Positions 12,449 through 61,436 are shown, counted from the stretch's first letter. The stretch: DNA of 64,000 nucleotides from Macrostomum lignano (GCA_002269645.1 NIVC01002857.1:70874-134873), one strand, 5' to 3'. A program made the numbers and translations. The notes: generated by a model from the sequence alone, not told the origin.

Positions 12449-15400
12449 TCAGAAAGTCATCCTGAACTCTATCAGAGCTTTGGTGTCCTTCTCCATGACA
12501 ATATCAGCCATGCTCATCAGTCTTCTCTCTTCGGGCTTTTCAGCCAGCCAGTCAACCAGTCTCCAAGACTCGCTGCTCCATCTCAACAACTTAAGCGTTG
12601 TCAACAAAGACTGGTCGCCTTGTCCATGGCCGCCAACCGCTGCAGTCCAAGTCCTGTCGCAGGGGAACAGTCTAGCAGTCCACAGGCTGCCACTGCCAGA
12701 CCATTCCGCCTCGTCCAATGGCAGGCCGTGGCGATGACAGAATTCCACCAACGGTCTGCCAAGAAATTTGGCTTCGGTTAAGCTTTGCTGCTTTGGATTG
12801 TCGTCCGAGTGCCAGGCCCACGTGACTTGGCCGGCTCCAGCTAGTAGCGGCACGGTCTGCAGCACCCAGCCATCCGGGATGACCAGTTCAGCTTCCGGCT
12901 CGCGGCATCGGCAATGACTCAACAAGCAGCCCGACCCGATGCGGCAGGAGCGAGCGGAGATTTCGCAGAATTCCAATGCGGAACCGGTTCCGTTGGATGA
13001 GATTTCCAAGCCGTTGGCTATGTTGATGCGAGAGTTGGTGACAAGGATAGGGCTGAAATAGGAAGTTTAATGCTTCTCTCTGTAGAGATTAGATTGATTA
13101 TTCCCTAAATCTCATAGAGATTAGATTGATTATTCCCTAAATCTTATAGAGATTGATTATTCCCTAATCTTATGGAAACTAGACTAATTTTTTCCTAAAT
13201 CTCAAAGGAATTAAATTGATTATTCACTAAATCTCATAGAGATTAGATTGACTATTCCCTAAATTGCATAGAGATTAGATTGATTATTCTCTAAATGTCA
13301 TAAAGATTAGATTGGTTAGTCTCTAAATCTCATATAGATTAGATAGATTATTTCCTAAATCTCACCCAGCGTCTCAACAATAGAGATTAGATTGATTATA
13401 TTCCCCAAATCTCATAGAGATTAGATTGATTATTCCCTAAATCTCATATAGATTAAATTGATTTTATTCCCTAAATCTCACCCAGAATAAAGATGGGGAT
13501 AAGATCTGATATTGTATTCAGAATAATATCTAGAAATGAGACAATATCATAAATCTTACCCACTGTCAGGTGCAGCGGCGGTGCTGAAGCACCTGGCTAA
13601 TTCGATAGGCTGAAACAGGTTATTCAAGTATTCTTTAGTGCTGCCAATGTGGACCAGTGCGGATCGTTCAATGCGGCACAGTTTGAGTTGTCTTCCTTTG
13701 AGCAGCTCAAACAGGCTCGTGCGCAGCTGGGCGAGACGAGCAGCTGTCGATGGACTGGGATGCCGGGTCAGGTTTCGAATCTCGTTGACGTAGTCATCGA
13801 GATGGGCGTCTCTGGGAGAGTGGGCGAGAAACCAATGCGGGACATGTTCAGTGGGTGCTCTGATCCTTCAGTGGGTGCTCTGACCCTTCAGTGGGTGCTC
13901 TGATCCTTCAGTGGGTGCTCTGATCCTTCAGTGGGTGCTCTGACCCTTCAGTGGGTGCTCTGATTCTTCAGTGGGTGCTCTGATTCTTCAGTGGGTGCTC
14001 TGATTCTTCAGTGGGTGCTCTGATCCTTCAGTGGGTGCTCTGATCCTTCAGTGGGTGCTCTGATCCTTCAGTGGGTGCTCTGACCCTTCAGTGAGTGCTC
14101 TGATTCTTCAGTGGGTGCTCTGATCCTTCAGTGGGTGCTCTGATTCTTCAGTGGGTGCTCTGATTCTTCAGTGGGTGCTCTGATTCTTCAGTGGGTGCTC
14201 TGATCCTTCAGTGGGTGCTCTGATTCTTCAGTGGGTGCTCTGATTCTTCAGTGGGTGCTCTGATCCTTCAGTGGGTGCTCTGATCCTTCAGTGGGTGCTC
14301 TGACCCTTCAGTGGGTGCTCTGATTCTTCAGTGGGTGCTCTGATTCTTCAGTGGGTGCTCTGATCCTTCAGTGGGTGCTCTGACCCTTCAGTGAGTGCTC
14401 TGATTCTTCAGTGGGTGCTCTGATTCTTCAGTGGGTGCTCTGATTCTTCAGTGGGTGCTCTGATCCTTCAGTGGGTGCTCTGATCCTTCAGTGGGTGCTC
14501 TGATCCTTCAGTGGGTGCTCTGATCCTTCAGTGGGTGCTCTGATCTTCAGTGGGCGTGCTAACTTCAACCCGACAGACACTCCAAGTCCCTCTATAGTGC
14601 GACAAGGTCGCTCTCACCTAGGTGCCGTAGCCCAATGGTCTAGCGTAGCGCTCTGATGTGCCTGCGGCCCAGGCTCGATTCCAAGTGCAGTCACATTAAT
14701 TTGGGGCTCAATTGTAATCTCGGCTTGGCTCTGCTCGTGCAATTAACGACCTTAAGGCTGAGGGCCCCCAAGGCACAGTGAAGTGTACATGCCCAACGAT
14801 AAATAAAGTTAGGGCCCCTGGGTCTAATAAAAAGGCCTCTCTCACCTGCCCAGTCCCCGCAGCAGGTCTCCGTAAGCATCCAGCTCCACCCCAGCCATGG
14901 AGGATTCGTTGGCATCTCGCCAGGCCAATAAGGCTTCGATGAAGTGACCGTTCAACCAAAAATTTGAATCAATCAAAATGCTACCATCTGTGGAGTCGAT
15001 AAGCCCGCTAGCTGATCGCATCTCCGCAATAGTCGGTTTTTGAAGCACCCGAGAACAGTCCAGAACGGTGAAGCTATTCGAACTGCATCGATAATCCTCT
15101 TGGTTGCTTAGCTCCCCCTGGTCAACATCTACGCAGTAAACTCCGTGTCCGGTTGCTAAGCTCAAATCCACAGTGGGATGGGCTAAAGCGACTATGTCGG
15201 ACTCGGCGAGGCGGCGAGAACAAGTCGAATTGGATATTAGACTGATGGAATCGAACTTGTAGGGTAGCAGAGCGTCTGAGCAGGCTGTGCGGGACAGGGT
15301 GGGCGTTTAAGAAAGAGCTAAGCACTGGTTAGAGATTTGACAGATCTTGAAGCTTATTGTACAGACACCTGATCGGTCATTGTACCAATATCTTGAAGCT

Positions 15401-16487
15401 TATTGTACAGACACCTGATCGGTTATTGTACCAATATCTTGAAGCTTATTGTAGACACTTTATCGGTTGTTGTACCAATATCTTGAAGCTTATTTTACAG
15501 ACACCTGATCGGTTGTTGTGCCAATATCTTGAAGCTTATTGTACAGAGACCTGATCGGTTGTTGTACTAATATCTTGAAGCTTATTGTACAGAGACCTGA
15601 TCGGTTGTTGTACCAATATCTTGAAGCTTATTGTACAGAGACCTGATCGGTTGTTGTACCAATATCTTGAAGCTTATTGTACAGAGACCTGATCGGTTGT
15701 TGTACCAATATCTTGAAGCTTATTGTAAAGAGACCTGATCGGTTGTTGTACCAATATCTTGAAGCTTATTGTACAGAGACCTGATCGGTTGTTGTACCAA
15801 TATCTTGAAGCTTATTGTACAGAGACCTGATCGGTTGTTGTGCCAATATCTTGAAGCTTATTGTAAAGAGACCTGATCGGTTGTTGTACCAATATCTTGA
15901 AGCTTATTGTACAGAGACCTGATCGGTTGTTGTACCAATATCTTGAAGCTTATTGTACAGACACCTGATCGGTTGTTGTGCACGCTTGGGTTGTTCTGTT
16001 CCAAAAACTGCAACATACCTAAGAAACAGCATCCAACGCCAGCATTGGCAGCGAACTGCGCAAACGGTTCCGACAGAGCAGTGACAATGTCAAGCATATC
16101 CAAGCAGCCCGCGCTGACTGTTGGCATCACAGCGAATAATTTTCCTAGGGCGGAAAGCCATGGCGACCGTTGGCTCATGCCACCAGCTGGGATAAATAGT
16201 ATTCGCAGTTTAGATAATTTTTTGATGCCAAATTCCAGTCGAAGCTGGTTGAGACAGTGCAGCAGAGCGCCGCCATTGCCTGTAAGTTAGGAAAGCAGTT
16301 TAGGCACAACTATATGTTTAGTGATCCGAAGATGAGTTTTAATTTCACTCACCAATTTTTGGACCTGGTGGATCCGAGTAGATTCTTAACTTGTCTTTAA
16401 ACTTTTGCTCGCCTAGTATTTTATAACCCAAAGCTTGGTCAGAATCAGACGCGCAGATGGCAATAATGTCAAACGATGTTTTTCGAT
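12449..16487 (-). CDS. FPGT: Fucose-1-phosphate guanylyltransferase (GDP-L-fucose pyrophosphorylase); start exon not located
   Basis: Exons 16487-16353, 16279-16019, 15284-14846, 13811-13560, 13052-12449. GT-AG, phase consistent, about 563 aa. Motifs matching the FPGT family: FDIIAICASD, YSDPPGPKIGNGGA, AGGMSQRSPWLSALGKLF, ALAHP..LATGHGVY, ELDAYGDLLRGLG, LFELLKG..LVHIGSTKEYL, SLWTARLFP. Confidence 0.88.
13078..13485. repeat. Degenerate 32-bp minisatellite, last FPGT intron
   Basis: Unit AGAGATTAGATTGATTATTCCCTAAATCTCAT. Confidence 0.9.
13846..14556. repeat. 20-bp minisatellite, FPGT intron
   Basis: Unit CTTCAGTGGGTGCTCTGA(T/C)(C/T), about 35 copies. Confidence 0.97.
14621..14832 (+). mobile_element. 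tRNA-derived SINE, family A, short copy in an FPGT intron (antisense to the gene)
   Basis: Homologous to 11086-11280 (GCTCTGATGTGCC..GCGGCCCAGGCTCGATTCCAAGTGCAGTCACATTAATTTGGGGCT..GATAAATAAAGTTAGGGC). Ends in AATAAAAA. Confidence 0.75.
15345..15978. repeat. 46-bp minisatellite, FPGT intron
   Basis: Unit TCTTGAAGCTTATTGTACAGAGACCTGATCGGTTGTTGTACCAATA, about 13-14 copies. Confidence 0.97.
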
Positions 16488-18130: not shown

Positions 18131-19001
18131 TTCTTGAGTCTTGGTTGGCATGCATTACTCCTAAGAAAATAGTTTGCATACACACTTATGCACTTTATAG
18201 AATCAATGGAAAAGTTATTTTAAAATAGAAAAAAGCTGAAAAAGTTAATTTTTACATAAATTTTAAGCTTTGGGGTCTTTTAAAAGCTTGTAATAAATCA
18301 GTCAAATAAATCTTTACATGTATTGATTTTCTTCTATAAATAATATTGCCAAAAAGCATAAAAATCAAATTAATCATATTATTTGCCAAAAAGGGTCTAT
18401 TGGGTCATTCCATATAATGACGGTTGTAACATTCTTACATACAAGCTCATGAATTAGTCCCTGTAATAAGCTAAAATCGTTTATATTTAAGTCATTCTAA
18501 AAGCAAAATATGTCTGTTACACTAAAAAAATTGTTTTACTCATTTGACTAATGATAACAAAATAAATTGAAGGCTAAGTTACATGATGGTCGTAACAAGA
18601 GAAATTGAAACAGTTGAAGGATGTCTTTTGTGTTTGTGAATTTACTCAATCTACAAATCTTAGAGGCACTGTAATGAATAATAATGTGTTGAAATGTTAT
18701 TACAACAAGAAAAAATAGTGCACATAATAATTGCATAACAACTCTTTGAACTATTAAACTTGTTTTAAACCTTGCGGTCGTAACATTGCGGTCGTAACAA
18801 ATTTCAAACTACCGACTTCTAATTTTTTTTTTCATTTCAGATCAACAAAGTACTATCCCTTGGCAAATTTCTACCTTTGAATAATAAATGAATAATAGAA
18901 TAGCTATTTTTTGTGTTATCAACCATTTCAGACCAATATTTTCATCACTGAATAGTCAGAAGTTGTGGCAAGCATAAGAAGCATAAGTTGGAAGAATAAG
19001 T

Positions 19002-21416
19002 TCATGGAAGACCATCAAAACGGAAGTGGCCCCGCCTGTCGACAGGAGTTGGTGGGCTAATTTCCTGAATTATATCTACTTGATAATAATAAATTTCGTC
19101 CTTCTTCTTAGGCCACATGAAATGGCGGTCACCAGACTTGGCCATGACGTTGACCCGGTACTCAGTGGCACTATCATCCGACTTCCTAATTTTGGTGACT
19201 TCGCCAGGGTATTTCGACTCATTGTAGTTCACGAGCACCCATGTTCCAACTACAATTGAAATTGCAGTTCGGCTGGCCGACGTTGCTGAAGGATTTCCTT
19301 CAAGTGCATGATTCACCGGTGGCTTGGCAGTAGCCTCGGATTGAGCAGCTTCAGTAAGTGCTTGCATTGTAGAGAGAGGCGAACGGTAAGTAGCTCGGAC
19401 TGATAAGCTTGCAGACCAGAAGTGATCCTTCTTGATATTGGCGATCTACAGTTATTTGTTGTAAGCTAGCTATAAATAAAACATAAACTGTTTGACTGCA
19501 TAGCTGTAACAACTTAAATACAATCAGATTCGTACCGCAGGTGCAGCCGATAGGATGTTCACAAATTCCTCGTTATATATGGCTTGGATCTCCTCCTGGG
19601 TGATATAGTGGCACTCGATTCGGCAGTCTTCAACGGCTACCAGAAATTCATGGGCGTTTCGTACAAGCAGGCGGCCTGACCTCACTTTGATCCGCGCAGC
19701 ACGCTTCAAGGTGCCACCAAGGCCGTCGATAGCCCCTTTGCCGTGGCTGGTCGCGAAGAAGTTCCATGTCGCGCGTGACAGCTGGAACTTCTGGACGAGC
19801 ACCGAGAGCATGCAGTGCATGTACCGGTTTTTAAACTGCGATGCCGGCCCATCACTCCAGATGTGCACTGTCATGTTGGGCACACAGATTTGCTGTAAAT
19901 AAGTTAAGTATTCATGATCGTATTCGAAATGAGTATTTGGAATTATTAACTAATAAATGTTTCAATATGTTTACTTTGAACAGATGGTCCAGGAAGACCG
20001 AGACCGTCTCTCGGCCATGGTTAGTCGTGTCGCTGACGATCGCGAGCATTTTCTTCTTCGACTTCCAGTACACAGCAACAGTAAAGATCGTGACCTGTTG
20101 CTGGCACCAATATGCACTCTGTGTGGCATTCTGACTCACACACGAGTAATTTTCTGAGACGTCGAAGTGAATTACGACCTCCGAGTTTTCTGACAAATTG
20201 TCCTTTTGTTGCCGGTGGAAATCGGCCTGTTGGCGGTTGGTGAGATGATGCACCAAAAATTTCGGCAGGTTGATCAACAGCTTCTGCATGCCATCTTGCA
20301 GCGTACTGCTGTTTTTGTTGGGCTGCATGCGTCCAGTGTCACGGTCGACTTCCCACGACAGGTAGTTGATCTGCACTGCAGCTTGCTCACGAGTTGGCGC
20401 CGGAATGCGATGAGCGAGACCTGATGAGCAGTTCTCGCACTGTGCCAGCTTGCAAGCCTCGCTGATGGGGCTGCACAGCACGAACTTGTCGACCCAGGAG
20501 CGAGAATATTCGTCAATGCCTGGCATCCGCTTAGCGATGGCGTTGCATAAACTGGAATAAGAACGTGGTTTATAAAAAATCATTTTGTGGGTTAAGAAAA
20601 ATTCTTAAATTTTGGTCATATAATTAATTACAAAAAAGTGAATCCTACTTCTGAAAGTTGCTGTGATAAGTGCAGCAGCAAGCCTCCATCGGAGTCTTCT
20701 CCAATGTGATGACGTTAGGTGGCCGCAAATCACAGAACTTAGAGAGGGAAATTTTACGTTCTGGTGCTTCGTCCAGAAAGACGCGATGGCACTCTTTCAA
20801 ATTCATAAGCAAAAATCGCTTTTGCAGCTGCTGCCTGTTGACCTTTATGAATTCCTTGACACCCGGTGACCAGCGGGAGATGTCCTCCCGATTATAGAAT
20901 TGGAGGACGGCGTCCTGGGTTCCAGGGTCCAGCTTCTGCCGTGTAGCTGGAGCTGAATCCGCAATAACTAGACCGCAGTCGGCAGCTAGCTGGCGCACAA
21001 CGGCTAGGCGCCTATCGGGAGTGTTCGGCAGAGCGTCCTTGCACCTGCAATGAATTTAAAATATGATTTTCTAATGATTTTCACTATTCTTTAAACACCT
21101 TTGAACCATAATAATTGCCATTAACGACTTACTTATTCACTGCCCGAGTGTGCGTGCGTTTGCTGCTATACGGATCGCCTTCAGCAGCCTGTACATCAGG
21201 TACAGCAGGAGCCTGTTCAGCAACAGCGGCCGCTGCTGTCTTCAGACGCTGGCGCATCTTTTTCATTCGCTCCCTTGCTTGTGCACGCTGCTTCGCAATA
21301 TCTGCGCTGTCTGCGAACTGACGCCGCACTCGACTGCGCTCTCGCTCGGAGGCTTGAAGGACATCGCCAGCTCGACGACGAAAATTCCGACAGTTTTCCG
21401 CGCTCGTTTTCACCAT
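19002..21416 (-). CDS. DDE/D transposase of the Sola-type element, 685 aa, 5 exons
   Basis: Exons 21416-21133, 21044-20649, 20551-19975, 19892-19536, 19445-19002. Total 2058 nt, no internal stop. Introns are 82-97 nt GT-AG. Motifs: HFDVSENY, QSAYW..QVTIFT, HIWSDGPASQFKNRY, WNFFATSHGKGAIDGLGGTLKR, Cys clusters, and C-terminal WVLVNYNESKYPGEV...F.WPKKKDEIYY. Confidence 0.85.
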
Positions 21417-21957
21417 AATTGTTTAATTTAAGAGCTTGCAAGAGCTTAAAGAGCTTACTAGCTGAAGAATGTAACTTATATGACTATAGAACGAATAGTT
21501 TGCATCAAATGTTGAATCGAGAAAGGGATTGAGCTGTGAGAATAATTATATTGACATTATATCACAGAATAATAGCATACAAACGTCTATGTTACGACCA
21601 GAAGGAGGATGTTACGACCACAACATTCTGGTCGTAACAAGCAGTTTTTAGCCTCAATGGAAAAATGTGGCAGTCTAAAAATTTCTGACAATACTGACAC
21701 CATAAGGAATGAGTTTTTTAAGTGTACCCTGCACCCTATAATAACTTCCACTTCAATGAGTAGAACTGAATGCATTTTAAACATTCTGGTCGTAACATTC
21801 ATACAGCTGACTAACTTTTATACAAAATACATGTTTCTATACAAATTGGATATGGCTGTTATGTTATGGATATTCGGCAGGTCATCCGGGATATTCGGTC
21901 CTAAAGCCCTTAGCCGAAGATCCATGTCAAGGATATTCAGTTGCCGAATAACCACAG

Positions 21958-22100
21958 TATGGTTATTCGGTTTCAAGTTTGAGCTATGGTTATTCTGCTT
22001 CAAGTTTGAGCTATGGTTATTCTGCTTCAAGTTTGAGCTATGGTTATTCTGCTTCAAGTTTGAGCTATGGTTATTCTGCTTCAAGTTTGAGCTATGGTTA
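21958..22100. repeat. 27-bp minisatellite inside the transposon
   Basis: Unit GAGCTATGGTTATTCTGCTTCAAGTTT, about 5 copies. Confidence 0.9.
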
Positions 22101-23699
22101 TGTACTACATGATCTGATTATTCCACTGATCACTCCACCAATAGTTATTGTTCCATTAAATAGTAAAGATGTGGTACAATTTCTAAATTACATGTGTAAG
22201 AATTTAATCATAGTTTGAAAGCAAAAAAAGAGCAGATACCTCTTTTAAAACTAATTATCAAAATCAGAACTTATTGGCTAAATATATATAGTTTCAATAA
22301 AAGTCATTAAAAACACTAAAATAGGAAGAAAAAAATTTCAATTTTTTGTCCTAGTTATATGGAATGACCCTATTACGCAATTCAAAAAAGGTTATTTATT
22401 GTTATATAACGATGCCTTCTATAATCCCACTGTTGCCACCAAAGTTGTAGTAGGAGTGATTCCTCTTATTATAAAATATCTTGCTATTAAGCCACCAAAG
22501 TTATAACAGGGGTTTTCTTCTATTTTTATAAATGATTCCACAGCTGTCATCAAAGTTGTTACAGGGCTAATTTGCTATGCTCTCTTACTGGTCGTTATTA
22601 ATGTACTTAATGTTTGTACTTATATCTATTGGTAACATATCTACTTCTCTATCTACCTTTGTACTGGTAGCATATAATTATCTACTGGTAGCGCATGTGT
22701 ATACACTATACTTCTGGCCTAAGTTGTCTAATGACACTGTCTATTTTATTCTCACTATTTATTCTTATAGAGGTTTTCTCTTAGTCCTAGGTGTTCCTGG
22801 GATGCAGGATCAGGAGGTCATAGGTTTTATGCAATTTCTCCTGCCTAAGGTGATTATTAAAGTGGTTATTGCCCTTAGGCGATTTTCTCATTTTTAGCAA
22901 ACTCAATACTCTTGAATTAGGCTCTTACTTCTAAGGAAAATAATAAGTCTCTTAAGCACTACAATTTAATATATAAATGTTAGCTTGTTAGCTCGCAAGA
23001 AGGGAGCAAAATAGGTAGACAAGTTGCTCTTCTTGGCCCACTCTGGGCTTTTATTTATACTGCTTGAACAATATATTTAAAACAATTTTTTATAATAATT
23101 TTTGGTTTTACAACAATTTAAACAAAAAAATCTTTTGACCAGAAATTTGATTACTATATTTTTTAATAAATAATTTATAATTGTAGCAAGAATACACTGA
23201 AAGAACACTCTCAGAAGACTCTTAGAAGACTCTACAAAAGGTACACTATCTTAGCTGCCTTCCCTTAAGGAAATTTATGAAAAAAAGGAAAAAAATATAG
23301 AAAGAGTAGAAAAATTTTTTAGAGTAAATAAAATTGCTAAATATTAAGATGTATATATCAAACAAGTATAACTAGAAAGGCAATTTATTAATAAGAAAAA
23401 AACTAGAAAAGCACTTATCCAAGTACTAAATGTACTTACAACAGACACATTTTTCAGATATATGAAAGTGGAAAATTTGTGCATAAAATCAAGGCAAATT
23501 TTTCACAGGTGCATTAAAAAGAAAAGGAAGAACATGCTGATAGTAAGATAAATGCTATAGGTGTATTACAAGTGAAAAATAATATGCTAATAGTAAGGTA
23601 AATGAACTACAGGTATACGAAGACACACTAGTAATATGGCCAATTCTACAAATACATGTATTGTCAATTAGTAAAGCACAAAAATGTCAGCATACAAAC

Positions 23700-23869: not shown

Positions 23870-23993
23870 ATACAAACTTGTCCATTCATAATCAGAAGTT
23901 GCAGTTATGTGGAAGGTCCCGAAATTCAGGCCAACCTAGTTGGGTAAACACCCAGCGCACCTCAATATTGACGAGTTGGCGCTGAATTGGCTG

Positions 23994-27017: not shown

Positions 27018-36302
<9,285 letters not shown>

Positions 36303-38306: not shown

Positions 38307-41300
38307 CTAGCCTTTGTTGCTGGCACCTTGTCGGACAATGTCGGCGACTGTTCGACCTTGATTGCCCCAGGCTGGCCGCGGCCGCTGGCTGGGTTTGTCA
38401 GACGCTGTCGGCGCAACCACAACCGGATTGTTGGGATCGTTCACGGAGACTTCAACGCGTCTAACTGGACGAGCGGATGGAGCGGAGGCTGCTGTTGCAG
38501 TGGAGTCTGCGGCCGCTGCTGCTACCGTCGCCGGCTCCTGTGGAATTTGAATGGCAGTCAGTGAGGGCGATTCTTAGATTTGAAGGTCGATTCTAAACTG
38601 AGAAGGGCGATTCTTAGATTTGAAGGTCGATTCTAAACTGAGAAGGGCGATTCTTAGATTTGAAGGCCGATTCTAAACTGAGAACTGCCATTTTTTAGAT
38701 TTGAAGGCCGATTCTAAACTGAGAACTGCCATTTTTTAGATTTGAAGGCCGATTCTAAACTGAGAAGGGCCATTCTTAGATTTGAAGGCCGATTCTAAAC
38801 TGAGAAGGGCCATTCTTAGATTTGAAGGCCGATTCTAAACTGAGAAGGGCCATTCTTAGATTTGAAGGCCGATTTTTAACTGAGAAGGGAATTCTTAGAT
38901 TTGAAGGCCGATTCTAAACTGAGAAGGGCCATTCTTAGATTTGAAGGCCGATTCTAAACTGAGAAGGGCCATTCTTAGATTTGAAGGCCGATTCTAAACT
39001 GAGAAGGGCCATTCTTAGATTTTAAGGCCGATTCTAAACTGAGAAGGGCCATTATTAGATTTGAAGGCCGATTCTAAACTGAGAAGGGCCATTCTTAGAT
39101 TTGAAAGCCGATTCTAAACTGAGAACTGCCATTTTTTAGATTTGAAGGCCGATTCTAAACTGAGAAGGGCCATTCTTAGATTTGAAGGCCGATTCTAAAC
39201 TGAGAAGGGCCATTCTTAGATTTGAAGGCCGATTCTAAACTGAGAAGGGCCATTATTAGATTTGAAGGCCGATTCTAAACTGAGAAGGGCCATTCTTAGA
39301 TTTGAAGGCCGATTCTAAACTGAGAAGGGCCATTCTTAGATTTGAAGGCCGATTCTAAACTGAGAAGGGCCATTCTTAGATTTGAAGGCCGATTTTTAAC
39401 TGAGAAGGGCCATTCTTAGATTTGAAGGCCGATTTTTAACTGAGAAGGGCCATTCTTAGATTTGAAGGCTGATTCTTAACTGAGAAAGGCGATTCTAAAC
39501 TTAGAAGGGCCATTCTTAGATTTGAAGGCCGGTTTTTAAGCGGAAAGGGAGATTTTGGATGTGACCAATTCTGAAATGTAAAGAGCAACTCTTACGGGCA
39601 ACGTTGGTGCTGATTCTAATAACGTCTGAAAAAGAACAAATTAAACACGTACCTGTTTAGCCTCGGCTTCAATCGCAACAGTCTGAGCTGCAGTCGGCTG
39701 GTCATCAGATTTCTTAGCAATGCTCAGCGGCTTGGACCAGGCGCTGACTGGAGGCTTAGGGGCGTCAGTGAACGTGCCACTATTGGGCGCTGGAGCGGCT
39801 GCAACTTGAGCGGCAGATGAAGCGCCCTGACTCGGCGTTGGGTGCTTCAGATGTTGCGGCTGCTGCTGCTGACGGGCCGCTGGGCCACTCGGTCGATTGG
39901 CGCCAGCAGCTGTGGTGGCTGATGAAGCTGATTGGGAAGCTGAGGGATCCGGTCGAAGGGGAAGCGTTAACAGTGGAGTAACGGATATCATAAATACTGG
40001 GCTGCAGCGCTTTTTAGAAATGCTAGGGGTTGTGCCGGTTCTTAGAAATGCTAGGGGTTATGCCGGTTCTTAGAAATGCTAGGGGTTGTGCCGGTTCTTA
40101 GAAATTCTAGAGGTTGTGCCGGTTCTTAGAAATGCTAGGGGTTGTGCCGGTTCTTAGAAATGCTAGGGTTGTGCCGGTTCTTAGAAATGCTAGGGGTTGT
40201 GCCGGTTCTTAGAAATGCTAGGGGTTGTGCCGGTTCTTAGAAATGCTAGGGGTTGTGCCGGTTCTTAGAAATGCTACGGGTTGTGCCGGCTCTTAGAAAT
40301 GCTAGGGGTTGTGCCGGTTCTTAGAAATGCTAGGGGTTGTGCCGGTTCTTAGAAATGCTAGGGTCGTGCCGGTTCTTAGAAATGCTAGGGTCGTGCCGGT
40401 TCTTAGAAATGCTAGGGGTTGTGCCGGTTCTTAGAAATGCTAGGGGTTGTGCCGGTTCTTAGAAATGCTAGGGTCGTGCCGGTTCTTAGAAATGCTAGGG
40501 TTGTGCCGGTTCTTAGAAATGCTAGAGGTTGTGCCGGTTCTTAGAAATGCTAGGGGTTGTGCCGGTTCTTAGAAATGCTAGGGGTTGTGCCGGTTCTTAG
40601 AAATGCTAGGGTTGTGCCGGTTCTTAGAAATGCTAGGGTTGTGCCGGTTCTTAGAAATGCTAGGGTCGTGCCGGTTCTTAGAAATGCTAGGGTCGTGCCG
40701 GTTCTTAGAAATGCTAGGGGTTGTGCCGGTTCTTAGAAATGCTACGGGTTGTGCCGGTTCTTAGAAATGCTAGGGGTTGTGGCGGTTCTTAGAAATGCTA
40801 GGGTCGTGCCGGTTCTTAGAAATGCTAGGGTCGTGCCGGTTCTTAGAAATGCTAGGGGTTGTGCCGGTTCTTAGAAATGCTAGGGTCGTGCCGGTTCTTA
40901 GAAATGCTAGGGTCGTGCCGGTTCTTTGAAATGCTAGGGGTTGTGCCGGTTCTTAGAAATGCTAGGGGTTGTGCCGGTTCTTAGAAATGCTAGGGGTTGT
41001 GCCGGTTCTTAGAAATGCTAGGGGTTGTGCCGGTTCTTAGAAATGCTAGGGGTTGTGCCGGTTCTTAGAAATGCTAGGGGTTGTGCCGGTTCTTAGAAAT
41101 GCTAGGGGTTGTGCCGGTTCTTAGAAATTCTATGCTTGTAAAAATAATTAATATAATTGATTACACCTGCCTTAATGGGCAGATGTGCAACCGAGAGCTC
41201 AGCCGCAGCTATTGCGTGGCGCATCTGAAGGCTGCGTACGGCTGTTCAGTCCAAGGACTGGGGGGTCGCCACACACACCCTCAATTACCCCAGCTAATGC

Positions 41301-44297
41301 TGGCACCCATTTTAGAGCTGGGTGAACTGAAGCAATGCAGAGTTAAGTGTCTTGCTCAAGGATACAAATTGTTCTTCCGAGTGGGTCAAGAATTGAACCT
41401 CGACATTCAAGTCGTGACTCTGACACTCTAACCACTAGGCTAGGCTTGTCACAATTCTTAGAAATGCTGGGCTTGTCGCAATTCTTAGAAATGCTAGGCT
41501 TGTCGCAATTCTTAGAAAAGCTAGGCTTGTCGCAATTCTTAGAAATGCTGGGCTTGTCGCAATTCTTAGAAATGCTAGGCTTGTCGCAATTCTTAGAAAT
41601 GCTAGGCTTGTCGCAATTCTTAGAAAAGCTAGGCTTGTCGCAATTCTTAGAAATGCTGGGCTTGTCGCAATTCTTAGAAATGCTGGGCTTGTCGCAATTC
41701 TTCAAAATGCGGGGTTGTGCTGATTCTTAGAATGGCTGCACGCGATAGGTCGATTCTTAAAAAGGCACGGTTTAGAATAAATCACAACTTTACCATTGCC
41801 AGTCGAATTAGCTGACTGCTGAGCAGACGGCTGCTGCTGTTGCTTCTGCTTGCGAACTTCCCAGACGTTGACACTTGGCGGCTTCGCGTCGACCATCTTG
41901 GGCGGAGGCGGCGCCTGCGGTGGCTGCTGCTGTTTCTCCGAAGTTCCCGACGATGACGACTGTTGACGAACTTTTTTAGATCCGGGACTGTGACCTGCCG
42001 ACGCTACTACTCCGGCAGTAGTATTTGTGACATTTTCATTCTCGTCAACTCTACTGCTAGACGACGAAGCGTGCTGCCTTCTTGGACCCGCTCCACTCTC
42101 GCTGCCAGCTGTTGCCGCCTGCTGCTGTCGCTCCCGTTCCAGACGTTCTTCAATCCGACGCTCAACTGACGCCGTGTCAACCGGCTTGGCGGCGCCAAAA
42201 ATTGCGGGTGCCGCGGCGGCCGGCGCTTGAGCGGCGGAGTCAGTTGATTCGGCTGGCGGCTTGCTGCGCGGAATCAGGACTAGCTTCTTGCGCTGCCTGG
42301 GCGGCGAGGGCGAACGTCGATTTCTGGGCGGCGAACGGCGATCCCTGGGCGGAGAACGGCGATCCCTGGGCGGAGAACGGCGATCTCTGGGCGAGGGAGA
42401 TCGGCTACTCGGTGACGGAGATCGCCTTCTCGGCGAAGGAGATCGCCTTCTCGGCGACGGGGATCGCCTTCTCGGCGACGGGGATCGCCTTCTCGGTGAC
42501 GGGGATCGCCCTCTCGGCGACGGCGATCGCCTTCTCGGTGACGGGGATCGCCTTCTCGGTGACGGGGATCGCCTTCTCGGTGACGGGGATCGCCTTCTCG
42601 GTGACGGGGATCGCCCTCTCGGCGACGGCGATCGCCTTCTGGGTGACGGCGATCGGCTGTATCTGGGCGGCGGCGATCGTCGACGCTGATTTGACGGCGA
42701 AGGCGACCGGCCACGTTCACGGTCTGGCGACGGCGAACGTCGACGCCGATTCAACGGCGAAGGCGACCGACGCCACGGACCCGCAGGCGAGCGACGCCTG
42801 CCAGCGAATGCGGTACCGCCGCCGCCAGAACGAGGAGACGGCGATCGTCGCCTGGGGCCGCCACCGGATCGCCAATTTGTGTCGGCGTCGACACGTGACG
42901 GACTGGTTCCCTGTCGGCCCCAGCCAGGCCGGCGCTCCATGCCGCCGCCGACAGCGCCGCCGCCGCGACCTCCGCCTCCGACGCGCATCGGTGGGCCCTG
43001 AGGCTTGGCACCGGCCCGCCACGGCCCCTGCGGGCTGGGCGTTCGACGACGCTCCGGCCGCGACATGCCGCCGTCGCGAGAATCCCGACCGCCGCCCCGG
43101 CCGCCGGTGAAACCGTTGTTGGCCGGCGACGAAGGAGGCGGAGGTCTCGCACTTTTGCGCCAATTATTATCGGTCTCGGAGGCCATCTCAGCTTGTAGGC
43201 CGTCACGTCCTGGCCGACCCTTGCCGCCCGCCTGCTGGCCCTGGCCAGCCTGATTGTCAACGAAGTCGATTTTGATTCGCCTTGTACCGATCGCGCGATC
43301 GGACATCTGCAGAGCTTTGATCATGTCCTCGGCTGTGCGCAGGGTCACGTAGCCAAATCCGCGCAGACTGTTGCGTTCGTTGCGGAGCAGATCAATCTGA
43401 GGGTTCGGGTTCGGCACCGTGAAAGTTTTGAGGCTTTTAAAATCTCGGCATATTTGTTGGAAAAATGGCATCCCTAACTCCCAATCCACCATAGGGAAAC
43501 TGGCATCCCAAACTCCCAATCCATCATAGGGAAACTGGCATCCCAAACTCCCAATCCATCATAGGGAAACTGGGATCCCAAACTCCCAATCCACCATAGG
43601 GAAACTGGGATCCTAAACTCCCAATCCACCATAGGGAAACTGGGATCCTAAACTCCCAATCCACCATAGGGAAACTGGGATCCTAAACTCCCAATCCACT
43701 ATAGGGAAACTGGCATCCCAAACTCCCAATCCATCATAGGGAAACTGGCATCCCAAACTCCTAATCCACCATAGGGAAACTGGGATCCCAAACTCCCAAT
43801 CCACCATAGGGAAACTGGGATTCCAAGCTCCCAATCCATAATGGGGAAACTGAGGACAAAAAGTCAGCTTCAAACGTAAAAAATGTAAAAAAAATTGTTT
43901 AATAGCATACCTCGACAACGTCCAGATCCTTGAAGAACTTAGCAACATTCTCCTCGGATGTGTCGAATGGCAAACTGCCAACATAAACCTTAAACGGAGG
44001 CTGTTTAGGCACTTTGCTCAAATCCAAATCTGGTTTAGTTGCCGCCTTAGGCGCAGCTGGCAAGTTTCTGCGCAAACTGAGCAAATCGTTCAGGCCAACA
44101 AATCCGGGGTCCTCTTCTTCCATCACTTCGCCCCAATCGGCGGCGGGCCTGGCCGGTTGTTGTTCGAGTTTGCCAACAACGCCGACATTCTCGCCAATAA
44201 AATCTGTTAGATGCATTTTAGTGCCTTTGTTCTGCTTTTTACCTTTCTTTCCGCCTCCAGTTGCTGGCTTGGCAGCCTCGGATGCTGAATCGGCCAT
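38307..44297 (-). CDS. EIF4B: Eukaryotic translation initiation factor 4B with an expanded RS/RSPSP region, about 835 aa, 4 exons
   Basis: Exons 44297-43911, 43396-41794, 39939-39653, 38537-38307. Total 2508 nt, GT-AG, in phase. eIF4B hallmarks: KKGKKQNKGTKMHLTDF, ADWGE, LPAAPKAA..PDLDLSKVPKQPPFKVYVGSLPFD (RNP2), RGFGYV (RNP1), RIKID, RKKLVLIPRSKP, IFGAAKPVDTASVERRIEERLERE. Confidence 0.88.
38562..39535. repeat. 40-bp minisatellite, eIF4B intron 3
   Basis: Unit GATTCTAAACTGAGAAGGGCCATTCTTAGATTTGAAGGCC, about 24 copies. Confidence 0.97.
40012..41130. repeat. 27/28-bp minisatellite, eIF4B intron 2
   Basis: Unit GGGGTTGTGCCGGTTCTTAGAAATGCTA, about 40 copies. Confidence 0.97.
41140..41442 (-). 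mobile_element. tRNA-derived SINE with a CORE-like central domain (family B)
   Basis: On the - strand: A-box TAGCCTAGTGGTTAGAG, B-box GGTTCAATTCT, then ATCCTTGAGCAAGACACTTAACTCTGCATTGCTTCAGTTCACCCAGCTCTAAAATGGG, which resembles the MIR/CORE consensus as I recall it. AT-rich tail. Confidence 0.75.
41445..41705. repeat. 27-bp minisatellite, eIF4B intron 2 (related to the 40012 array)
   Basis: Unit GGCTTGTCGCAATTCTTAGAAATGCTA, about 9 copies. Confidence 0.95.
43465..43850. repeat. 35-bp minisatellite, eIF4B intron 1
   Basis: Unit CCAATCCACCATAGGGAAACTGGGATCCTAAACTC, about 11 copies. Confidence 0.95.
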
Positions 44298-46118
44298 TGT
44301 GTGTTTATTCAGTTGGCCAATGAAGAAAATTTCATGCATTGTAATAAGAGCTCGACTCTTGATACTAACCATAGCCAACTTTGCTTAACCTGTAGCATTA
44401 ACAATAATATAAAGTGGGAAAATTTAGCTAACTAAACAAGTCCAAACATTTTTGGTAAGCAAGTTAACAAGAATTAATTGCAGCAGTTATTTATACACTG
44501 ATCAATCAAAAAAATAATAAAAATATTAAAGATCTTAAAAAACACAATAAGAATCAATACTTTTAAAATTCTCCCAATTTTATTGTTGTATCTCATTGCT
44601 TCTAATGTGGTTTTTCTTCAAAAATCCAAACATAAATTAAATACTCATCATTTCTACTACAAAATACTTTATATAGCTCAAAAAAGCAACAAAGAAACAG
44701 GTTTAGAATTCATAAATTTTAAGGTATATAAATTTAAAATGTTTTTTTTCTTTCCATTTAAATAATAATAATTATACTTTTTGTAAAGCACCCAGTTATT
44801 TTTTCTATTAACATAAACAACAAAGATCAAATTGTCCTTTTTAAAAGAGGTAAATATGTGTCTTTAAGACCTTAAGAGTAAAAATTAATATCAAAAAAAT
44901 AAATTCCTTTTTGTCCTATGGCTAATTATCATAAGCAAACTGTTTAGGTAGATTGTGTTATTTAATAATTAAAGCCATAACAATTTACTTTTTAATCTAC
45001 TATTTATAGCGCTGTTCTTCAAATTTTTAATACAATATATAAAATTTCAGTTATATTTATTTAAATTTTTTAGCTAAAGTAGGCTATATGCCTTTGATAG
45101 GAGTTAGGCATCTAAGAAAAACTATGATTTTAAGCATAATAAAAAGCCAATGATAGTTACAAAATATTTTAGACTAGTTTTCAAAAAAATATAATTTATG
45201 CTAGCATACCAAGATAAAACTGCATAGATCTGCAACTGCCATGTTTGCTAGCCAACCTAGCCAATCTAATTATAGGGGTCAGAAGATAGGATCTCAATCT
45301 TGATCTTGATTATCAAGATCTTGGCACTTTTCTTAATCTTAATTTGGTTTCAAGATCTCAAAAAAGTCAAAATTTGTAACAATGACTATTAAAATCTTTA
45401 AAATATATTGTCTAACTATTAGGCCTAATTAGTCTATTTGGTAACATAGCTAAGGGGGAAACTGGAATATAGATTCCTAATCTTAATCAACTGCACTTGG
45501 GAAGAGTCAAGAGAGGTTAAGATTATAAGATAGATATACCAATTTCCTATCATTTCGTGTTTCTTAAGAATTAAAATGGAATGTGATATAATAAGATAAA
45601 ATAGATTTTTTATATTATAATAATGTAGTATATAAATTATAATCATATAAGAAAATTTATAAATTATATAATATATGTTGGAACAAGAATCTTATCTAAA
45701 TTAAATATTTGCCAATATTTAGCAAAAACAAAAAATTTCCCAAAAATGTCTATAGTCCTAAGTATAGACTGTGCTTTTTTGCTTTTCACCCTGCATACAA
45801 GAGGGTTAGATCAAATTCACCAAGTATATGCCAATGGACCAGAGGGGAGGGGGTTAGACCATAGAAGGCAGCTACAAAGACTTTGAGTTTGATTCTATAA
45901 AACAATATCCAATGAAGTATTCAAATTTTAAATGAAAGATAATAGATAAACAATACTTATAAAAATGCTTATATATTGTAGTGACCTAAATAATAATATA
46001 CTTGGTATTTATAAATATATTACTTTATAGTAATAAAAACATTTTATTATTATAGAATAATCATTTTAAAAGTATCACAATGTTTTCAAAGGCCTAAAAA
46101 ATTCACGTGAGACATAGC

Positions 46119-47895: not shown

Positions 47896-48259
47896 ATTTT
47901 GATGTCTGCTTTCTAGAAATTCGCAATCACACAATCGCAAGGTTTTAACTTGCAGAATTATTTTCTTGTTTGCTTGCTTGTTTTGATTGCTTGTAAAGTT
48001 GGTCAGTCAATTATTACTTACTACAGATGCTTTGCAAGTGGATTCTTATCAGGGTCAACGTAAACTGACTTGACACTAAGCTTTCAAACTAGGCTTATAG
48101 AGTTTCATTCTAAGAATGTAGTATATAGAATGCTTAGAGATTTAGTATAGGTAGATAGGGATTGGTAACAGTAAAAATCTTTGTAGTTCCTGATTTCAGC
48201 ACGATTGAGCAGGTATGATAATTGCAGTGATGCTAATGTATAATAATGCATATACTAAT

Positions 48260-49048
48260 GGCTCATTCCATATAAGATGGACATATTTGGAAAATAGAAA
48301 AAAGTCAATATTTTTGCTTGCCACTGCCTGATTAGCCAATTTTTTTACCAAATGTTTTTTATGTGTAACATCTATAATCTAAGAATAAATGAATGATAAA
48401 ATGTTAGATTAGTATGTTATCAAGTGGCAAAAGGTAATTTTTGTAAAAAATTGGACAGTTTTTTAAGCAAAAGACATCATTAAGTTTGTGAACCTTTTAA
48501 AAACAAATAGAAAGCTTTGGAAGGTTGAAACAAACTATAGATAAAAGTATAGTACTTGCATCATCAGATAAAAGTATTGATGAACAAATAATCAATTATA
48601 TTTTTAATATATTGGTACCTCTAAGTTACTGAATTGACAGAACAAAATATGTTACGACCAGAATGTTACGACCATAAGGCTGCCTTTTCTTTTGTATCTT
48701 TGTTGCCTTTTTGAGTTTATATATTCTACAAAAAGAGTATGATTTCTGAAGATGTTCTTAGTCGAATTTTAAAAAATTTATTGCAAAATATCAAAAATGA
48801 AAAATGTTATAAGACTTTTACCTTTTAGTTTCTATCTGTCAAAAATCCTGTCGTTATGACCAGAAGTGCCATTCAAGGTTTAATAGCATCTATATTAATG
48901 ATGATATCTACATGAAACTCTATAAAAATATTCTTGACAAAAAAATCTTTCATTTAAAATATTGGTTTAGTGTATTCTATTATTAGATTTCATTTTATAA
49001 GTAAAAAATAGCCTGTCATGTTACGACCATAATTATATGGAATTGCCC
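48260..49048. mobile_element. 789-bp non-autonomous Sola-type element
   Basis: Left end GGCTCATTCCATATAA; rc of right end GGGCAATTCCATATAA (1 and 2 mismatches to the 18402 TIR). TSD TAAT (48256-48259 and 49049-49052). Internal TGTTACGACC at 48650, 48664 and 49019. Confidence 0.8.
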
Positions 49049-49199
49049 TAATAATATTTTAGTATAAAAAATGTAATTAATAATCCGCCATATCTTCATA
49101 CAAAATCATAACACTATAGGCCTAGGCAACTTCCACGAATCTTAGAAATACAAGAGCTCAAAAATAGGTTTCTTTAAGGTCCTACAAAACTTTAGCTGG

Positions 49200-54428: not shown

Positions 54429-61436
<7,008 letters not shown>

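What the first reader, a model, noticed from the sequence alone, without database searches (positions are those of the whole stretch)
18402..22370. Apparently intact, intron-containing Sola-type transposon, potentially active
Seen: perfect 16-bp TIRs, a perfect TATT TSD, and five exons that splice in phase into an uninterrupted 685-aa transposase with all three acidic catalytic-type motifs (FDVSE, SDG, GAIDG). CpGs are retained although the flanks are CpG-poor. The six-frame track shows only fragments, so this could be misannotated as several hypothetical genes. Established: Sola2 elements have GRG..CYC termini and 4-bp TSDs. As I recall, many have TIRs of hundreds of bp, whereas this one has a short TIR plus dispersed subterminal motifs. 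Inference: a recent insertion of an autonomous element and a candidate transgenesis or mutagenesis tool.
Basis: partly seen in the sequence, partly recalled or inferred. Interest (0 to 1): 0.7.

Follow-up and report, generated by a model that had tools for sequence, protein, structure and literature searches.

The report
Intact intron-bearing Sola2 DNA transposon
This is a complete copy of a known kind of jumping gene (a Sola2 cut-and-paste DNA transposon) with an unbroken, five-exon transposase gene; it is a good candidate for a still-mobile element, but it is an ordinary member of a very large family.

Summary
Positions 18402-22370 are a 3969-bp element with perfect 16-bp inverted ends (GGGTCATTCCATATAA) and a perfect 4-bp duplication (TATT). 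Five minus-strand exons join through four GT..AG introns (88/97/82/90 nt) into a 685-aa protein.

The catalytic core matches the published Sola2 reference (Sola2-1_HM: BLASTP E=2e-18; profile probability 99.75%). It does not match Sola1 or Sola3. The three aspartates (D357, D433, D475) are invariant among 31 relatives and sit on an RNase H/integrase-like fold.

New here:
- A 789-bp non-autonomous relative lies 26 kb away (48260-49048, duplication TAAT).
- Relatives with only 31-43% protein identity, one from a sea urchin, share the terminus GGGNNATTCC and 4-bp duplications.
- Four of these relatives also carry subterminal 10-mers at the same distances from the gene-distal end (20, ~186, ~374, ~390 bp). 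The 10-mer sequence differs by lineage.
- Intron 4 is conserved in position and phase in a 43%-identical relative.
- The C-terminus models as a BAH/Tudor-like barrel.

The CpG argument for recency fails, and short inverted ends are normal for Sola2. The intact gene implies about 1% neutral decay or less. Mobility is untested. Verdict: new member of a known kind.

The parts
18402..22370 (-). Whole autonomous Sola2 element, 3969 bp; the transposase gene is on the minus strand
   Evidence: TIRs, TSD and gene model:
18398..18401 (.). Left copy of the target-site duplication, TATT
22371..22374 (.). Right copy of the target-site duplication, TATT
18402..18417 (+). TIR at the gene-distal (3') end, GGGTCATTCCATATAA
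   Evidence: the terminus GGGNNATTCC is shared with relatives
22355..22370 (-). TIR at the gene-proximal (5') end, a perfect inverted copy
21133..21416 (-). Exon 1 (ATG at 21416-21414): basic, helical N-terminal region
   Evidence: the N-terminus MVKT.. matches P0003
20649..21044 (-). Exon 2: conserved FY.R(D/E)DIS..PG.K block and the start of the Cys/His cluster (C217, C219, H222)
19975..20551 (-). Exon 3: rest of the Cys cluster (C260, C265, C268) and first catalytic Asp D357 (codon 20163-20161, FDVSEN)
19536..19892 (-). Exon 4: second and third catalytic Asp, D433 (codon 19853-19851, WSDG) and D475 (codon 19727-19725, HGKGAIDG)
19002..19445 (-). Exon 5 with stop codon (19004-19002): linker plus C-terminal BAH/Tudor-like beta-barrel (about residues 600-685)
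21045..21132 (-). Intron 1, 88 nt, GT..AG, splits codon 95 (phase 2)
   Evidence: absent in relatives with continuous ORFs
20552..20648 (-). Intron 2, 97 nt, GT..AG, splits codon 227 (phase 2)
19893..19974 (-). Intron 3, 82 nt, GT..AG, phase 0
19446..19535 (-). Intron 4, 90 nt, GT..AG, phase 0; same position and phase as the single intron of the L002/L003 relative
18422..18799 (+). 3'-end array of four subterminal 10-mers (GGTTGTAACA at 18422; GGTCGTAACA at 18588, 18776, 18790), 20, 186, 374 and 388 bp from the terminus
   Evidence: the same distances occur in the MITE, L001, L002 and L008
21590..21797 (.). 5'-end array of four exact GGTCGTAACA copies (21590-, 21610-, 21630+, 21788+)
21958..22101 (.). 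27-bp tandem array (5.3 copies, 98% matches) in the 5' non-coding part of the element
48260..49048 (-). 789-bp non-autonomous (MITE-like) relative in the opposite orientation. TIRs GGCTCATTCCATATAA / GGGCAATTCCATATAA; TSD TAAT at 48256-48259 and 49049-49052; GGTCGTAACA 20, 375 and 389 bp from its right end

Best explanation
A structurally complete, autonomous Sola2-group cut-and-paste DNA transposon.

Proposed mechanism, with the basis for each step:
1. The host splices four short introns from the element's transcript, giving a 685-aa transposase (inferred; no RNA data).
2. The protein has a basic helical N-terminal region and a Cys/His cluster. These probably bind DNA (inferred).
3. It has an RNase H/integrase-like core with a D-D-D triad, D357, D433 and D475 (shown by homology and by a model of a 42%-identical relative).
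4. It has a C-terminal BAH/Tudor-like barrel that may tether it to chromatin (inferred from fold only).
5. The transposase is proposed to recognise the conserved terminus GGGNNATTCC plus an ordered set of subterminal 10-mers (GGTCGTAACA here). These sit at fixed distances from the ends and change in sequence together with the transposase lineage.
6. It excises the element and reinserts it with a 4-bp staggered cut, usually into A/T-rich tetranucleotides, which produces the TATT duplication.
7. A 789-bp non-autonomous relative in the same window shows that this system has moved more than once in this genome.

The copy is young (about 1% neutral decay or less) and may still be mobile.
For: Structure: TIRs, TSD and the gene model are confirmed.

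Sola2 membership:
- BLASTP to the Sola2-1_HM core: E=2e-18 over the whole 130-aa core.
- hhalign to the same core: probability 99.75%, E=3e-27.
- hhalign to amoebozoan Sola2_DFa-2: probability 95.8%, E=8e-9, aligning all three Asp motifs.

Catalytic residues and fold:
- D357, D433 and D475 are invariant in 32 sequences.
- 85 of 95 strongly conserved positions are kept, within the range of the relatives.
- The model of the 42%-identical P0001 has pLDDT 82.5 with the order b1-b2-b3-a1-b4-a2-b5-a.
- Foldseek top hits are retroviral integrase cores, Argonaute PIWI domains, the IstA transposase and RNase H1.
- The C-terminal domain model (pLDDT above 90 over residues 61-147 of exon 5) hits BAH, Tudor, chromo and PWWP domains at probability 1.00.

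Cis elements:
- GGTCGTAACA has 7 exact copies in the element and 3 in the MITE, and none elsewhere in the window. Allowing one mismatch gives 12 matches against 2.1 expected.
- Motif distances 20 / ~186 / ~374 / ~388-398 bp from the gene-distal end recur in the window element and in L001, L002 and L008. The MITE has the 20, 375 and 389 bp copies. The motif sequence differs by lineage.
- Related elements have TSDs AATA, TATA and AACT.

Introns, relatives and age:
- Intron 4 is conserved in position and phase in L002.
- Two L002/L003 copies are 99.93% identical, so the lineage has been recently active elsewhere.
- Neutral-decay simulation of ORF and splice-site intactness.
Against: - There is no transcript evidence for the splice model.
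- No second full-length copy, empty site or polymorphism could be found. Exact-product look-ups and pattern scans returned nothing. Age and activity therefore rest on intactness alone.
- An intact copy picked from an unknown number of copies is a biased sample.
- F358V next to the first catalytic Asp and K332N are departures at positions conserved in 90% or more of relatives. Their effect is unknown.
- Foldseek E-values are weak: 1e-3 for the core and 1e-2 for the C-terminal domain.
- The roles of the 10-mers, the N-terminal region and the C-terminal barrel are inferred. No binding was shown.
- The MITE shares only its termini and motifs with this copy, so it may belong to a sister family with a different source of transposase.
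Confidence: 0.85

Rival explanations
1. The element is a Sola2 copy that looks intact but is no longer mobile. It may be silenced, may carry a subtle inactivating substitution, or may be fixed, its intactness being only what one expects of the youngest copy of an extinct burst.
For: - No evidence of current activity could be obtained.
- F358V and K332N are departures at highly conserved positions.
- The element's non-coding parts are as CpG-poor as the flanks.
- The only other family member in the window has diverged TIRs, with 1 and 2 mismatches.
Against: - The ORF, all eight splice dinucleotides, both TIRs, the TSD and seven exact 10-mers plus one single-mismatch copy are intact.
- That is improbable beyond roughly 1-1.5% neutral decay.
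- The substitutions are conservative and similar in number to those of relatives that have near-identical multiple copies.
Confidence: 0.4
2. The four interruptions are not introns but small insertions or decayed segments, and the locus is a fragmented pseudogene that only appears to splice in frame.
For: - No RNA evidence.
- Several relatives (L001, L008, L011) have uninterrupted ORFs.
- The 82-97-nt interruptions are shorter than the roughly 200-1800-nt introns of the neighbouring Sec24 gene.
Against: - All four interruptions start with GT and end with AG after a pyrimidine-rich or AT-rich tract.
- They are 26% GC against 52% GC in the exons.
- They restore the frame exactly and leave no gap or extra residue against relatives at any junction.
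- Intron 4 lies at the same codon boundary and phase as the intron of a 43%-identical relative.
Confidence: 0.05
3. The gene is a domesticated, host-serving transposase-derived gene rather than a mobile element.
For: - Long intact ORF with introns.
- A chromatin-reader-like C-terminal domain.
- Only a single full copy is seen in 64 kb.
Against: - Perfect TIRs and TSD, and complete subterminal motif arrays at both ends, bracket the gene. Domesticated genes lose these.
- The same domain architecture, including the C-terminal barrel, is found in multi-copy mobile relatives.
- The profile finds 24,602 cluster representatives, the pattern of a selfish family.
Confidence: 0.03

Closest known systems
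Sola2 group of the Sola superfamily (reference Sola2-1_HM of Hydra, Repbase; catalytic core printed as group E.12 in the supplement of Majorek et al. 2014, PMC3985635)
   Same: - The catalytic core aligns over its full length: BLASTP E=2e-18, hhalign probability 99.75%.
- The signature blocks are shared: D(F/V)(S/A)ENY, (S/T)DG....(F/Y)KN and WNFFATSHG.
- 4-bp TSD and GGG..CCC termini.
   Different: - 32% identity to the Hydra core.
- This copy has four introns, whereas most relatives fetched here have none or one.
- The shared terminus GGGNNATTCC, the fixed-distance subterminal 10-mers and the C-terminal BAH/Tudor-like barrel define a sub-lineage. I could not check these features against Repbase descriptions.
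Amoebozoan Sola2 elements DFa-2 and PPa-1 (Bao and Jurka 2013, PMC3627910)
   Same: - 4-bp AT-rich TSDs (AWWT, ATAT, AAAT, ATTT) and short TIRs of 12-22 bp.
- The DFa-2 consensus starts GAG.. and ends ..CTC.
- The D-D-D core aligns: BLASTP E=1e-4, hhalign probability 95.8%.
   Different: - Those elements are 10-15 kb and carry a Fanzor1 gene; this one is 4 kb with a single gene.
- Only the catalytic core is alignable.
Uncharacterised relatives: Macrostomum lignano UniRef protein P0001 (42%), ENA ERZ26052287 elements L002/L003 (43%), Logan contigs L001 (39%) and L008 (31%), Diadema setosum L011 (31%)
   Same: - Full-length collinear proteins.
- Termini GGGNNATTCC and 4-bp TSDs.
- For L001, L002 and L008, the same spacing of subterminal motifs.
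- Intron 4 is shared with L002/L003.
   Different: - The 10-mer sequence is lineage-specific: GGGCGTAACA, GGATGTCACA, GGTCGTAAAT.
- Introns 1-3 are absent in these relatives.
- The 5' motif array lies about 210 bp further from the terminus in the window element.
Sola1 and Sola3 groups
   Same: Same superfamily label, with a D-D-D RNase H-like core. There is a faint profile signal to Sola1 (hhalign probability 47%, E=2e-4).
   Different: - BLASTP E=0.17 to the Sola1 core; best E=3.9 (non-significant fragments only) to the Sola3 core.
- hhalign probability to Sola3 is 0.35%.
- The signature blocks differ.
Analogy only: subterminal transposase-binding repeats of Ac/Ds, En/Spm and P elements, and chromodomain-bearing integrases of chromoviruses (from general knowledge)
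   Same: Multiple short subterminal motifs in addition to the TIRs, and a reader-type beta-barrel at the C-terminus of a DDE/D enzyme.
   Different: These are unrelated superfamilies. No binding or targeting has been shown for Sola2.

Membership tests
Sola2 | Transposase catalytic core homologous to reference Sola2 transposases | tested here: met
   - BLASTP to the Sola2-1_HM core: E=2e-18, 130 aa.
- hhalign of the family profile: 99.75%, E=3e-27.
- Sola2_DFa-2: 95.8%, E=8e-9.
Sola2 | D-D-D catalytic triad on an RNase H-like fold | tested here: met
   - D357, D433 and D475 are invariant in 32 sequences and align to the Asp motifs of DFa-2 and Sola2-1_HM.
- In the proxy model they lie on b1, after b4 and before the helix that follows b5.
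- Foldseek top hits are integrase cores, Argonaute PIWI domains and RNase H1.
- Catalysis itself was not tested.
Sola2 | 4-bp target-site duplication | tested here: met
   - TATT here and TAAT for the MITE.
- AATA, TATA and AACT in relatives.
- The literature value of 4 bp is in PMC3627910.
   - GGG...CCC here and in all relatives.
- The published DFa-2 consensus starts GAG and ends CTC.
- That this feature defines the group rests on memory.
Sola1 | Core homologous to the Sola1 reference (Sola1-1_AP) | tested here: not met
   BLASTP E=0.17. hhalign probability 46.7% over a partial stretch.
Sola3 | Core homologous to the Sola3 reference (Sola3-1_HM) | tested here: not met
   Best BLASTP E=3.9, non-significant fragments only. 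hhalign probability 0.35%.
Zator and other DDE/D superfamilies | Core homologous to those transposases or their Pfam models | tested here: inconclusive
   No Pfam family matches the protein or 31 relatives. This excludes the superfamilies that have Pfam models. No Zator reference sequence was available.
Active (currently mobile) transposon | Insertion polymorphism, excision footprints or transposition in an assay | not testable with these tools
   Only indirect evidence: intact ORF, splice sites, TIRs, TSD and motif arrays. No other copy or empty site was found.

The most novel reading that the evidence does not exclude
This copy is a live member of a Sola2 sub-lineage with three linked properties:
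1. Its transposase assembles on a fixed-geometry array of subterminal sites (20, ~186, ~374 and ~390 bp from one end).
2. The sequence of those sites co-evolves with the protein.
3. Its C-terminal BAH/Tudor-like barrel steers integration by reading chromatin.

As far as I know, this would be the first experimentally tractable Sola transposon and a new scaffold for gene transfer.
Probability: 0.25. Interest if true: 0.55.

Novelty: new member of a known kind. Interest (0 to 1): 0.33.

Why it matters
To my knowledge (not checked exhaustively), no Sola-superfamily element has been shown to transpose in an experiment. A clean, complete copy with a defined cDNA, ends and candidate binding sites is therefore a practical starting point for a mobility assay.

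The comparative results are the more useful part for the field:
- a terminus (GGGNNATTCC) conserved from a sea-urchin element to this one despite only 31% protein identity;
- subterminal motifs held at fixed distances while their sequence changes with the transposase;
- one conserved intron and three lineage-specific ones;
- a reader-like C-terminal domain.

For genome annotation, the gene is likely to be split into several hypothetical ORFs or missed. The protein was absent from a 5.8-billion-sequence collection. For biology at large it is an ordinary selfish element of a very large family: the family profile finds 24,602 cluster representatives.

Tried and rejected
I modelled the 42%-identical P0001 and the contiguous exon-5 product instead.
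- Pfam gave nothing for the protein or its relatives.
- Rfam found nothing in the window.
- The original Sola description (Bao et al. 2009) and Yuan and Wessler 2011 are not held.
- The published Sola2 alignment figure was unreadable as stored. Reference sequences came from other supplements.
- Host identification failed. Sec24 exons are at most 42-43% identical to the full-length matches found (spider, rotifer, fungi). The host is therefore an unidentified, poorly sampled eukaryote, probably an animal.
- Exact-product look-ups for the two largest element ORFs found nothing.
- Degenerate end-pattern scans of metagenome and viral contigs found nothing.
- BLASTN of the element against the rest of the window found only a 35-bp match, inside the MITE. 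The MITE is therefore not a simple deletion derivative of this copy.
- The TIR-like match at 23905-23920 (3 mismatches) has no partner or motifs and was dismissed as chance.
- The 167-aa plus-strand ORF 21609-22112 runs through the 27-bp tandem array and was not treated as a gene.
- CpG retention was rejected as evidence of youth.
- A domesticated gene and a pseudogene with false introns were considered and given low weight (see rival explanations).


Full report
**1. What is in the sequence**

Positions 18402-22370 hold a 3969-bp element.
- Its first 16 bases (GGGTCATTCCATATAA) are the exact reverse complement of its last 16.
- It is flanked on both sides by TATT (18398-18401 and 22371-22374).
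- A search for the 16-mer allowing 3 mismatches expects 0.46 matches in the window. None of 100 shuffles reached the 5 observed.
- The gene lies on the minus strand. Five open segments join through four GT..AG interruptions of 88, 97, 82 and 90 nt into a 2058-nt reading frame of 685 codons.
- The motifs FDVSE, SDG and GAIDG are at residues 356, 432 and 472.

**2. Is the splice model right?**

There are no RNA data, so this rests on four lines of sequence evidence.
- The alignment with 31 relatives (28-42% identity) runs through every junction without a gap or extra residue. The start (MVKT..) and the end (..RGHFRF..) also match relatives.
- The interruptions are 26% GC against 52% in the exons.
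- Several relatives have one continuous ORF across the same positions. The interruptions are therefore insertions relative to the coding sequence, not decayed codons.
- The relative L002/L003 (43% identity) has a single GT..AG intron at the same codon boundary and phase as intron 4: SAEK|VVGIKNMH against SAAPA|IANIKKDH.
- Intron 4 is therefore old within this lineage. Introns 1-3 are specific to the window's lineage, or were lost elsewhere.

**3. Which family?**

Pfam has no model for this protein or its relatives. The literature says the same for Sola transposases (PMC5751038). I therefore used published reference sequences:
- the catalytic cores of Sola1-1_AP, Sola2-1_HM and Sola3-1_HM, printed in the supplement of Majorek et al. 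2014;
- the Sola2 transposase of Dictyostelium fasciculatum from Bao and Jurka 2013.

| Reference | BLASTP of the window protein | hhalign of the 32-sequence family profile |
|---|---|---|
| Sola2-1_HM core | E=2e-18, full 130 aa | 99.75%, E=3e-27 |
| Sola2_DFa-2 | E=1e-4 | 95.8%, E=8e-9 |
| Sola1-1_AP core | E=0.17 | 46.7% |
| Sola3-1_HM core | best E=3.9, fragments only | 0.35% |

The block WNFFATSHG is identical between the window protein and the Hydra reference. The element is therefore a Sola2-group member.

The 4-bp TSD agrees with the published Sola2 value.

**4. The protein**
- D357, D433 and D475 are invariant among the 32 aligned sequences. So are C217, C219, H222, C260 and C265, a Cys/His cluster upstream of the core; C268 is conserved in at least 90%.
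- The window protein carries the majority residue at 85 of the 95 positions where at least 80% of relatives agree. Relatives score 82-99% on the same test. Most of the ten departures are conservative; F358V and K332N are the ones at positions conserved in 90% or more of relatives that are not simple like-for-like changes.
- The spliced protein could not be submitted for modelling. A model of the 42%-identical Macrostomum protein P0001 has mean pLDDT 82.5. It shows the order b1-b2-b3-a1-b4-a2-b5-a, with the three aspartates on b1, at the end of b4 and just before the helix after b5.
- Foldseek against the PDB puts retroviral integrase catalytic cores first, with Argonaute PIWI domains, the IstA transposase and RNase H1 also among the top hits. 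Probabilities are near 1 for the integrase hits and lower for the others; E-values are only about 1e-3 to 2e-2.
- The exon-5 product is contiguous in the window and was modelled directly. Residues 61-147 have pLDDT above 90 and form a small beta-barrel.
- The best matches of that barrel are BAH domains (Rsc2, ZMET2, AIPP3, BAHCC1, DNMT1), then Tudor, chromo and PWWP domains. Probability is 1.00 and E is about 1e-2.
- This is a fold-level resemblance to chromatin readers. No function is shown.

**5.

*The 10-mer.* GGTCGTAACA occurs exactly seven times in the element. Three copies plus a one-mismatch copy lie near the gene-distal end and four lie near the gene-proximal end. The only other exact copies in the 64-kb window, three of them, all lie in one place, 48650-49028. 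Allowing one mismatch gives 12 matches against 2.1 expected.

*The second element.* That place is a second element, 48260-49048 (789 bp).
- Its TIRs differ from the 16-mer at 1 and 2 positions.
- It has a perfect TAAT duplication.
- It shares only its ends and motifs with the large element.
- It is therefore a non-autonomous relative, perhaps of a sister family. It shows a second independent insertion with a 4-bp TSD in this genome.

*Relatives from public assemblies*:

| Locus | Protein identity | Terminus | TSD |
|---|---|---|---|
| L001 | 39% | GGGCAATTCCA | not readable (flanks do not match) |
| L002 | 43% | GGGCAATTCCATGAGA | AATA |
| L003 | 43% | GGGCAATTCCATGAGA | TATA |
| L008 | 31% | GGGCGATTCCATATAA | not readable (contig ends at the terminus) |
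| L011 (sea urchin Diadema setosum) | 31% | GGGCAATTCCG | AACT |

Sources for the table.

*Motif spacing.* In L001, L002 and L008, as in the window element, a 10-mer sits 20, about 186, about 374 and about 388-398 bp from the gene-distal terminus. The MITE has the 20, 375 and 389 bp copies. The 10-mer itself differs by lineage: GGGCGTAACA, GGATGTCACA, GGTCGTAAAT. The sequence between the motifs is not conserved.

Fixed positions combined with lineage-specific sequence is the pattern expected of transposase-binding sites that co-evolve with their protein. That reading is an inference.

*The 5' end.* The relatives have motifs about 366, 532 and 543 bp from the terminus. In the window element they are at 582, 740, 751 and 771 bp. 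A 27-bp x 5.3 tandem array (21958-22101) lies between them and the terminus.

**6. Age and activity**
- The two L002/L003 copies are 99.93% identical over 4277 bp. The lineage has therefore been active very recently in at least one other organism.
- For the window copy, the TIRs and TSD alone only bound divergence loosely: P(all 20 pairs intact) = 0.05 at 7%.
- A simple neutral simulation is tighter. It used substitutions with a transition bias, and indels at 10% of the substitution rate. The probability that the ORF, start codon and 16 splice-site bases all survive is 0.065 at 1% divergence and 0.015 at 1.5%.
- This supports 'young'. It is model-dependent and ignores the bias of picking an intact copy.
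Exon CpG o/e is 0.95, but host exons in the window are 0.76-1.28, and the element's own non-coding parts are 0.49-0.61, like the flanks at 0.55-0.67.
- No other copy, empty site or transcript could be retrieved. Whether the element moves today is untested.

**7. Context**
- The element sits in a 30% GC stretch. On one side is a fucose-pyrophosphorylase/fucokinase-like exon (12449-13009, minus strand). On the other is a Sec24 gene (about 27.2-36.3 kb, plus strand).
- Sec24 introns are roughly 200-1800 nt, longer than the element's 82-97-nt introns.
- The host could not be named. Its Sec24 exons are at most 42-43% identical to the full-length matches in the protein collection.

**8. Comparison and verdict**

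This is a new member of a known kind, the Sola2 group. The family is huge: the profile finds 24,602 cluster representatives at E<=1e-3 and 3,855 at E<=1e-30. Autonomous Sola2 consensus elements have been curated in, for example, bivalves (PMC10294476).

Short TIRs are documented for Sola2 (12-22 bp), so they are not a peculiarity of this copy.

What may be new at the level of detail:
- the conserved terminus;
- the fixed-geometry subterminal array;
- the conserved intron;
- the BAH/Tudor-like C-terminal domain.

I could not check these against Repbase.

Confidence that this is an intact autonomous Sola2 element is about 0.85-0.9. Confidence that it is mobile now is about 0.4-0.5.

Noticed in passing
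window 1-64000, e.g. 13847-14554, 15344-15979, 29991-30978, 38564-39496, 40014-41132, 57712-58795: The window is packed with minisatellite arrays of 14-63-bp units, plus long (CAGA)n/(TGTC)n tracts at 1434-2013, 31727-32264, 33483-34461 and 34962-35188. Many lie inside Sec24 introns. TRF reports 54 rows at score >=150 (overlapping rows can describe the same array).
   Followed up: partly
window 22421-22572: Three copies of a roughly 55-bp direct repeat (..GCCACCAAAGTTGTAGTAGGAGT..) begin about 50 bp to the right of the element. They are not part of it.
   Followed up: no
window 41702-44378, minus strand: An eIF4B-like gene. It has an RRM fragment followed by a long Arg/Ser/Pro repeat region (RRRSPSP units, 63% GC, CpG o/e 1.28) within a 614-aa open frame.
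   Followed up: partly
window 12449-13009 (-), about 27200-36300 (+), 58931-59368 (-): Host gene fragments: a fucose-pyrophosphorylase (fucokinase-like) domain; Sec24 with a Pro/Gln-rich N-terminal repeat and the Sec23/24 zinc finger; and a protein-kinase domain exon. The Sec24 exons are at most 42-43% identical to the full-length matches in the protein collection, so the host lineage is poorly sampled.
   Followed up: partly
window 57712-58795: A G-rich array, (GAGGGGTTTGAGGGGT)n, with GC skew +0.84. On the other strand it reads as a 406-aa Pro-rich open frame, probably not a gene.
   Followed up: no
L002 3495-7770 and L003 3495-7771 (ENA ERZ26052287): Two copies of a 4.28-kb relative differ by 2 substitutions and 1 indel and have different TSDs (AATA, TATA). 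This Sola2 family was very recently active in another, unnamed eukaryote.
   Followed up: partly
P0004: A 509-aa homologue (44% identity) is deposited as a hypothetical protein of a Kangiellaceae bacterium MAG on a 3.6-kb contig. This is most likely eukaryotic DNA binned into a bacterial genome.
   Followed up: no
P0025: One relative (982 aa) carries a C-terminal Ulp1-type protease domain (PF02902) after the transposase, in place of the usual short C-terminal barrel arrangement.
   Followed up: no
L011 1782-6108 (Diadema setosum OZ188206.1): The intronless sea-urchin relative, with TSD AACT, lies inside a gene for a RabGAP-TBC protein on the opposite strand.
   Followed up: no
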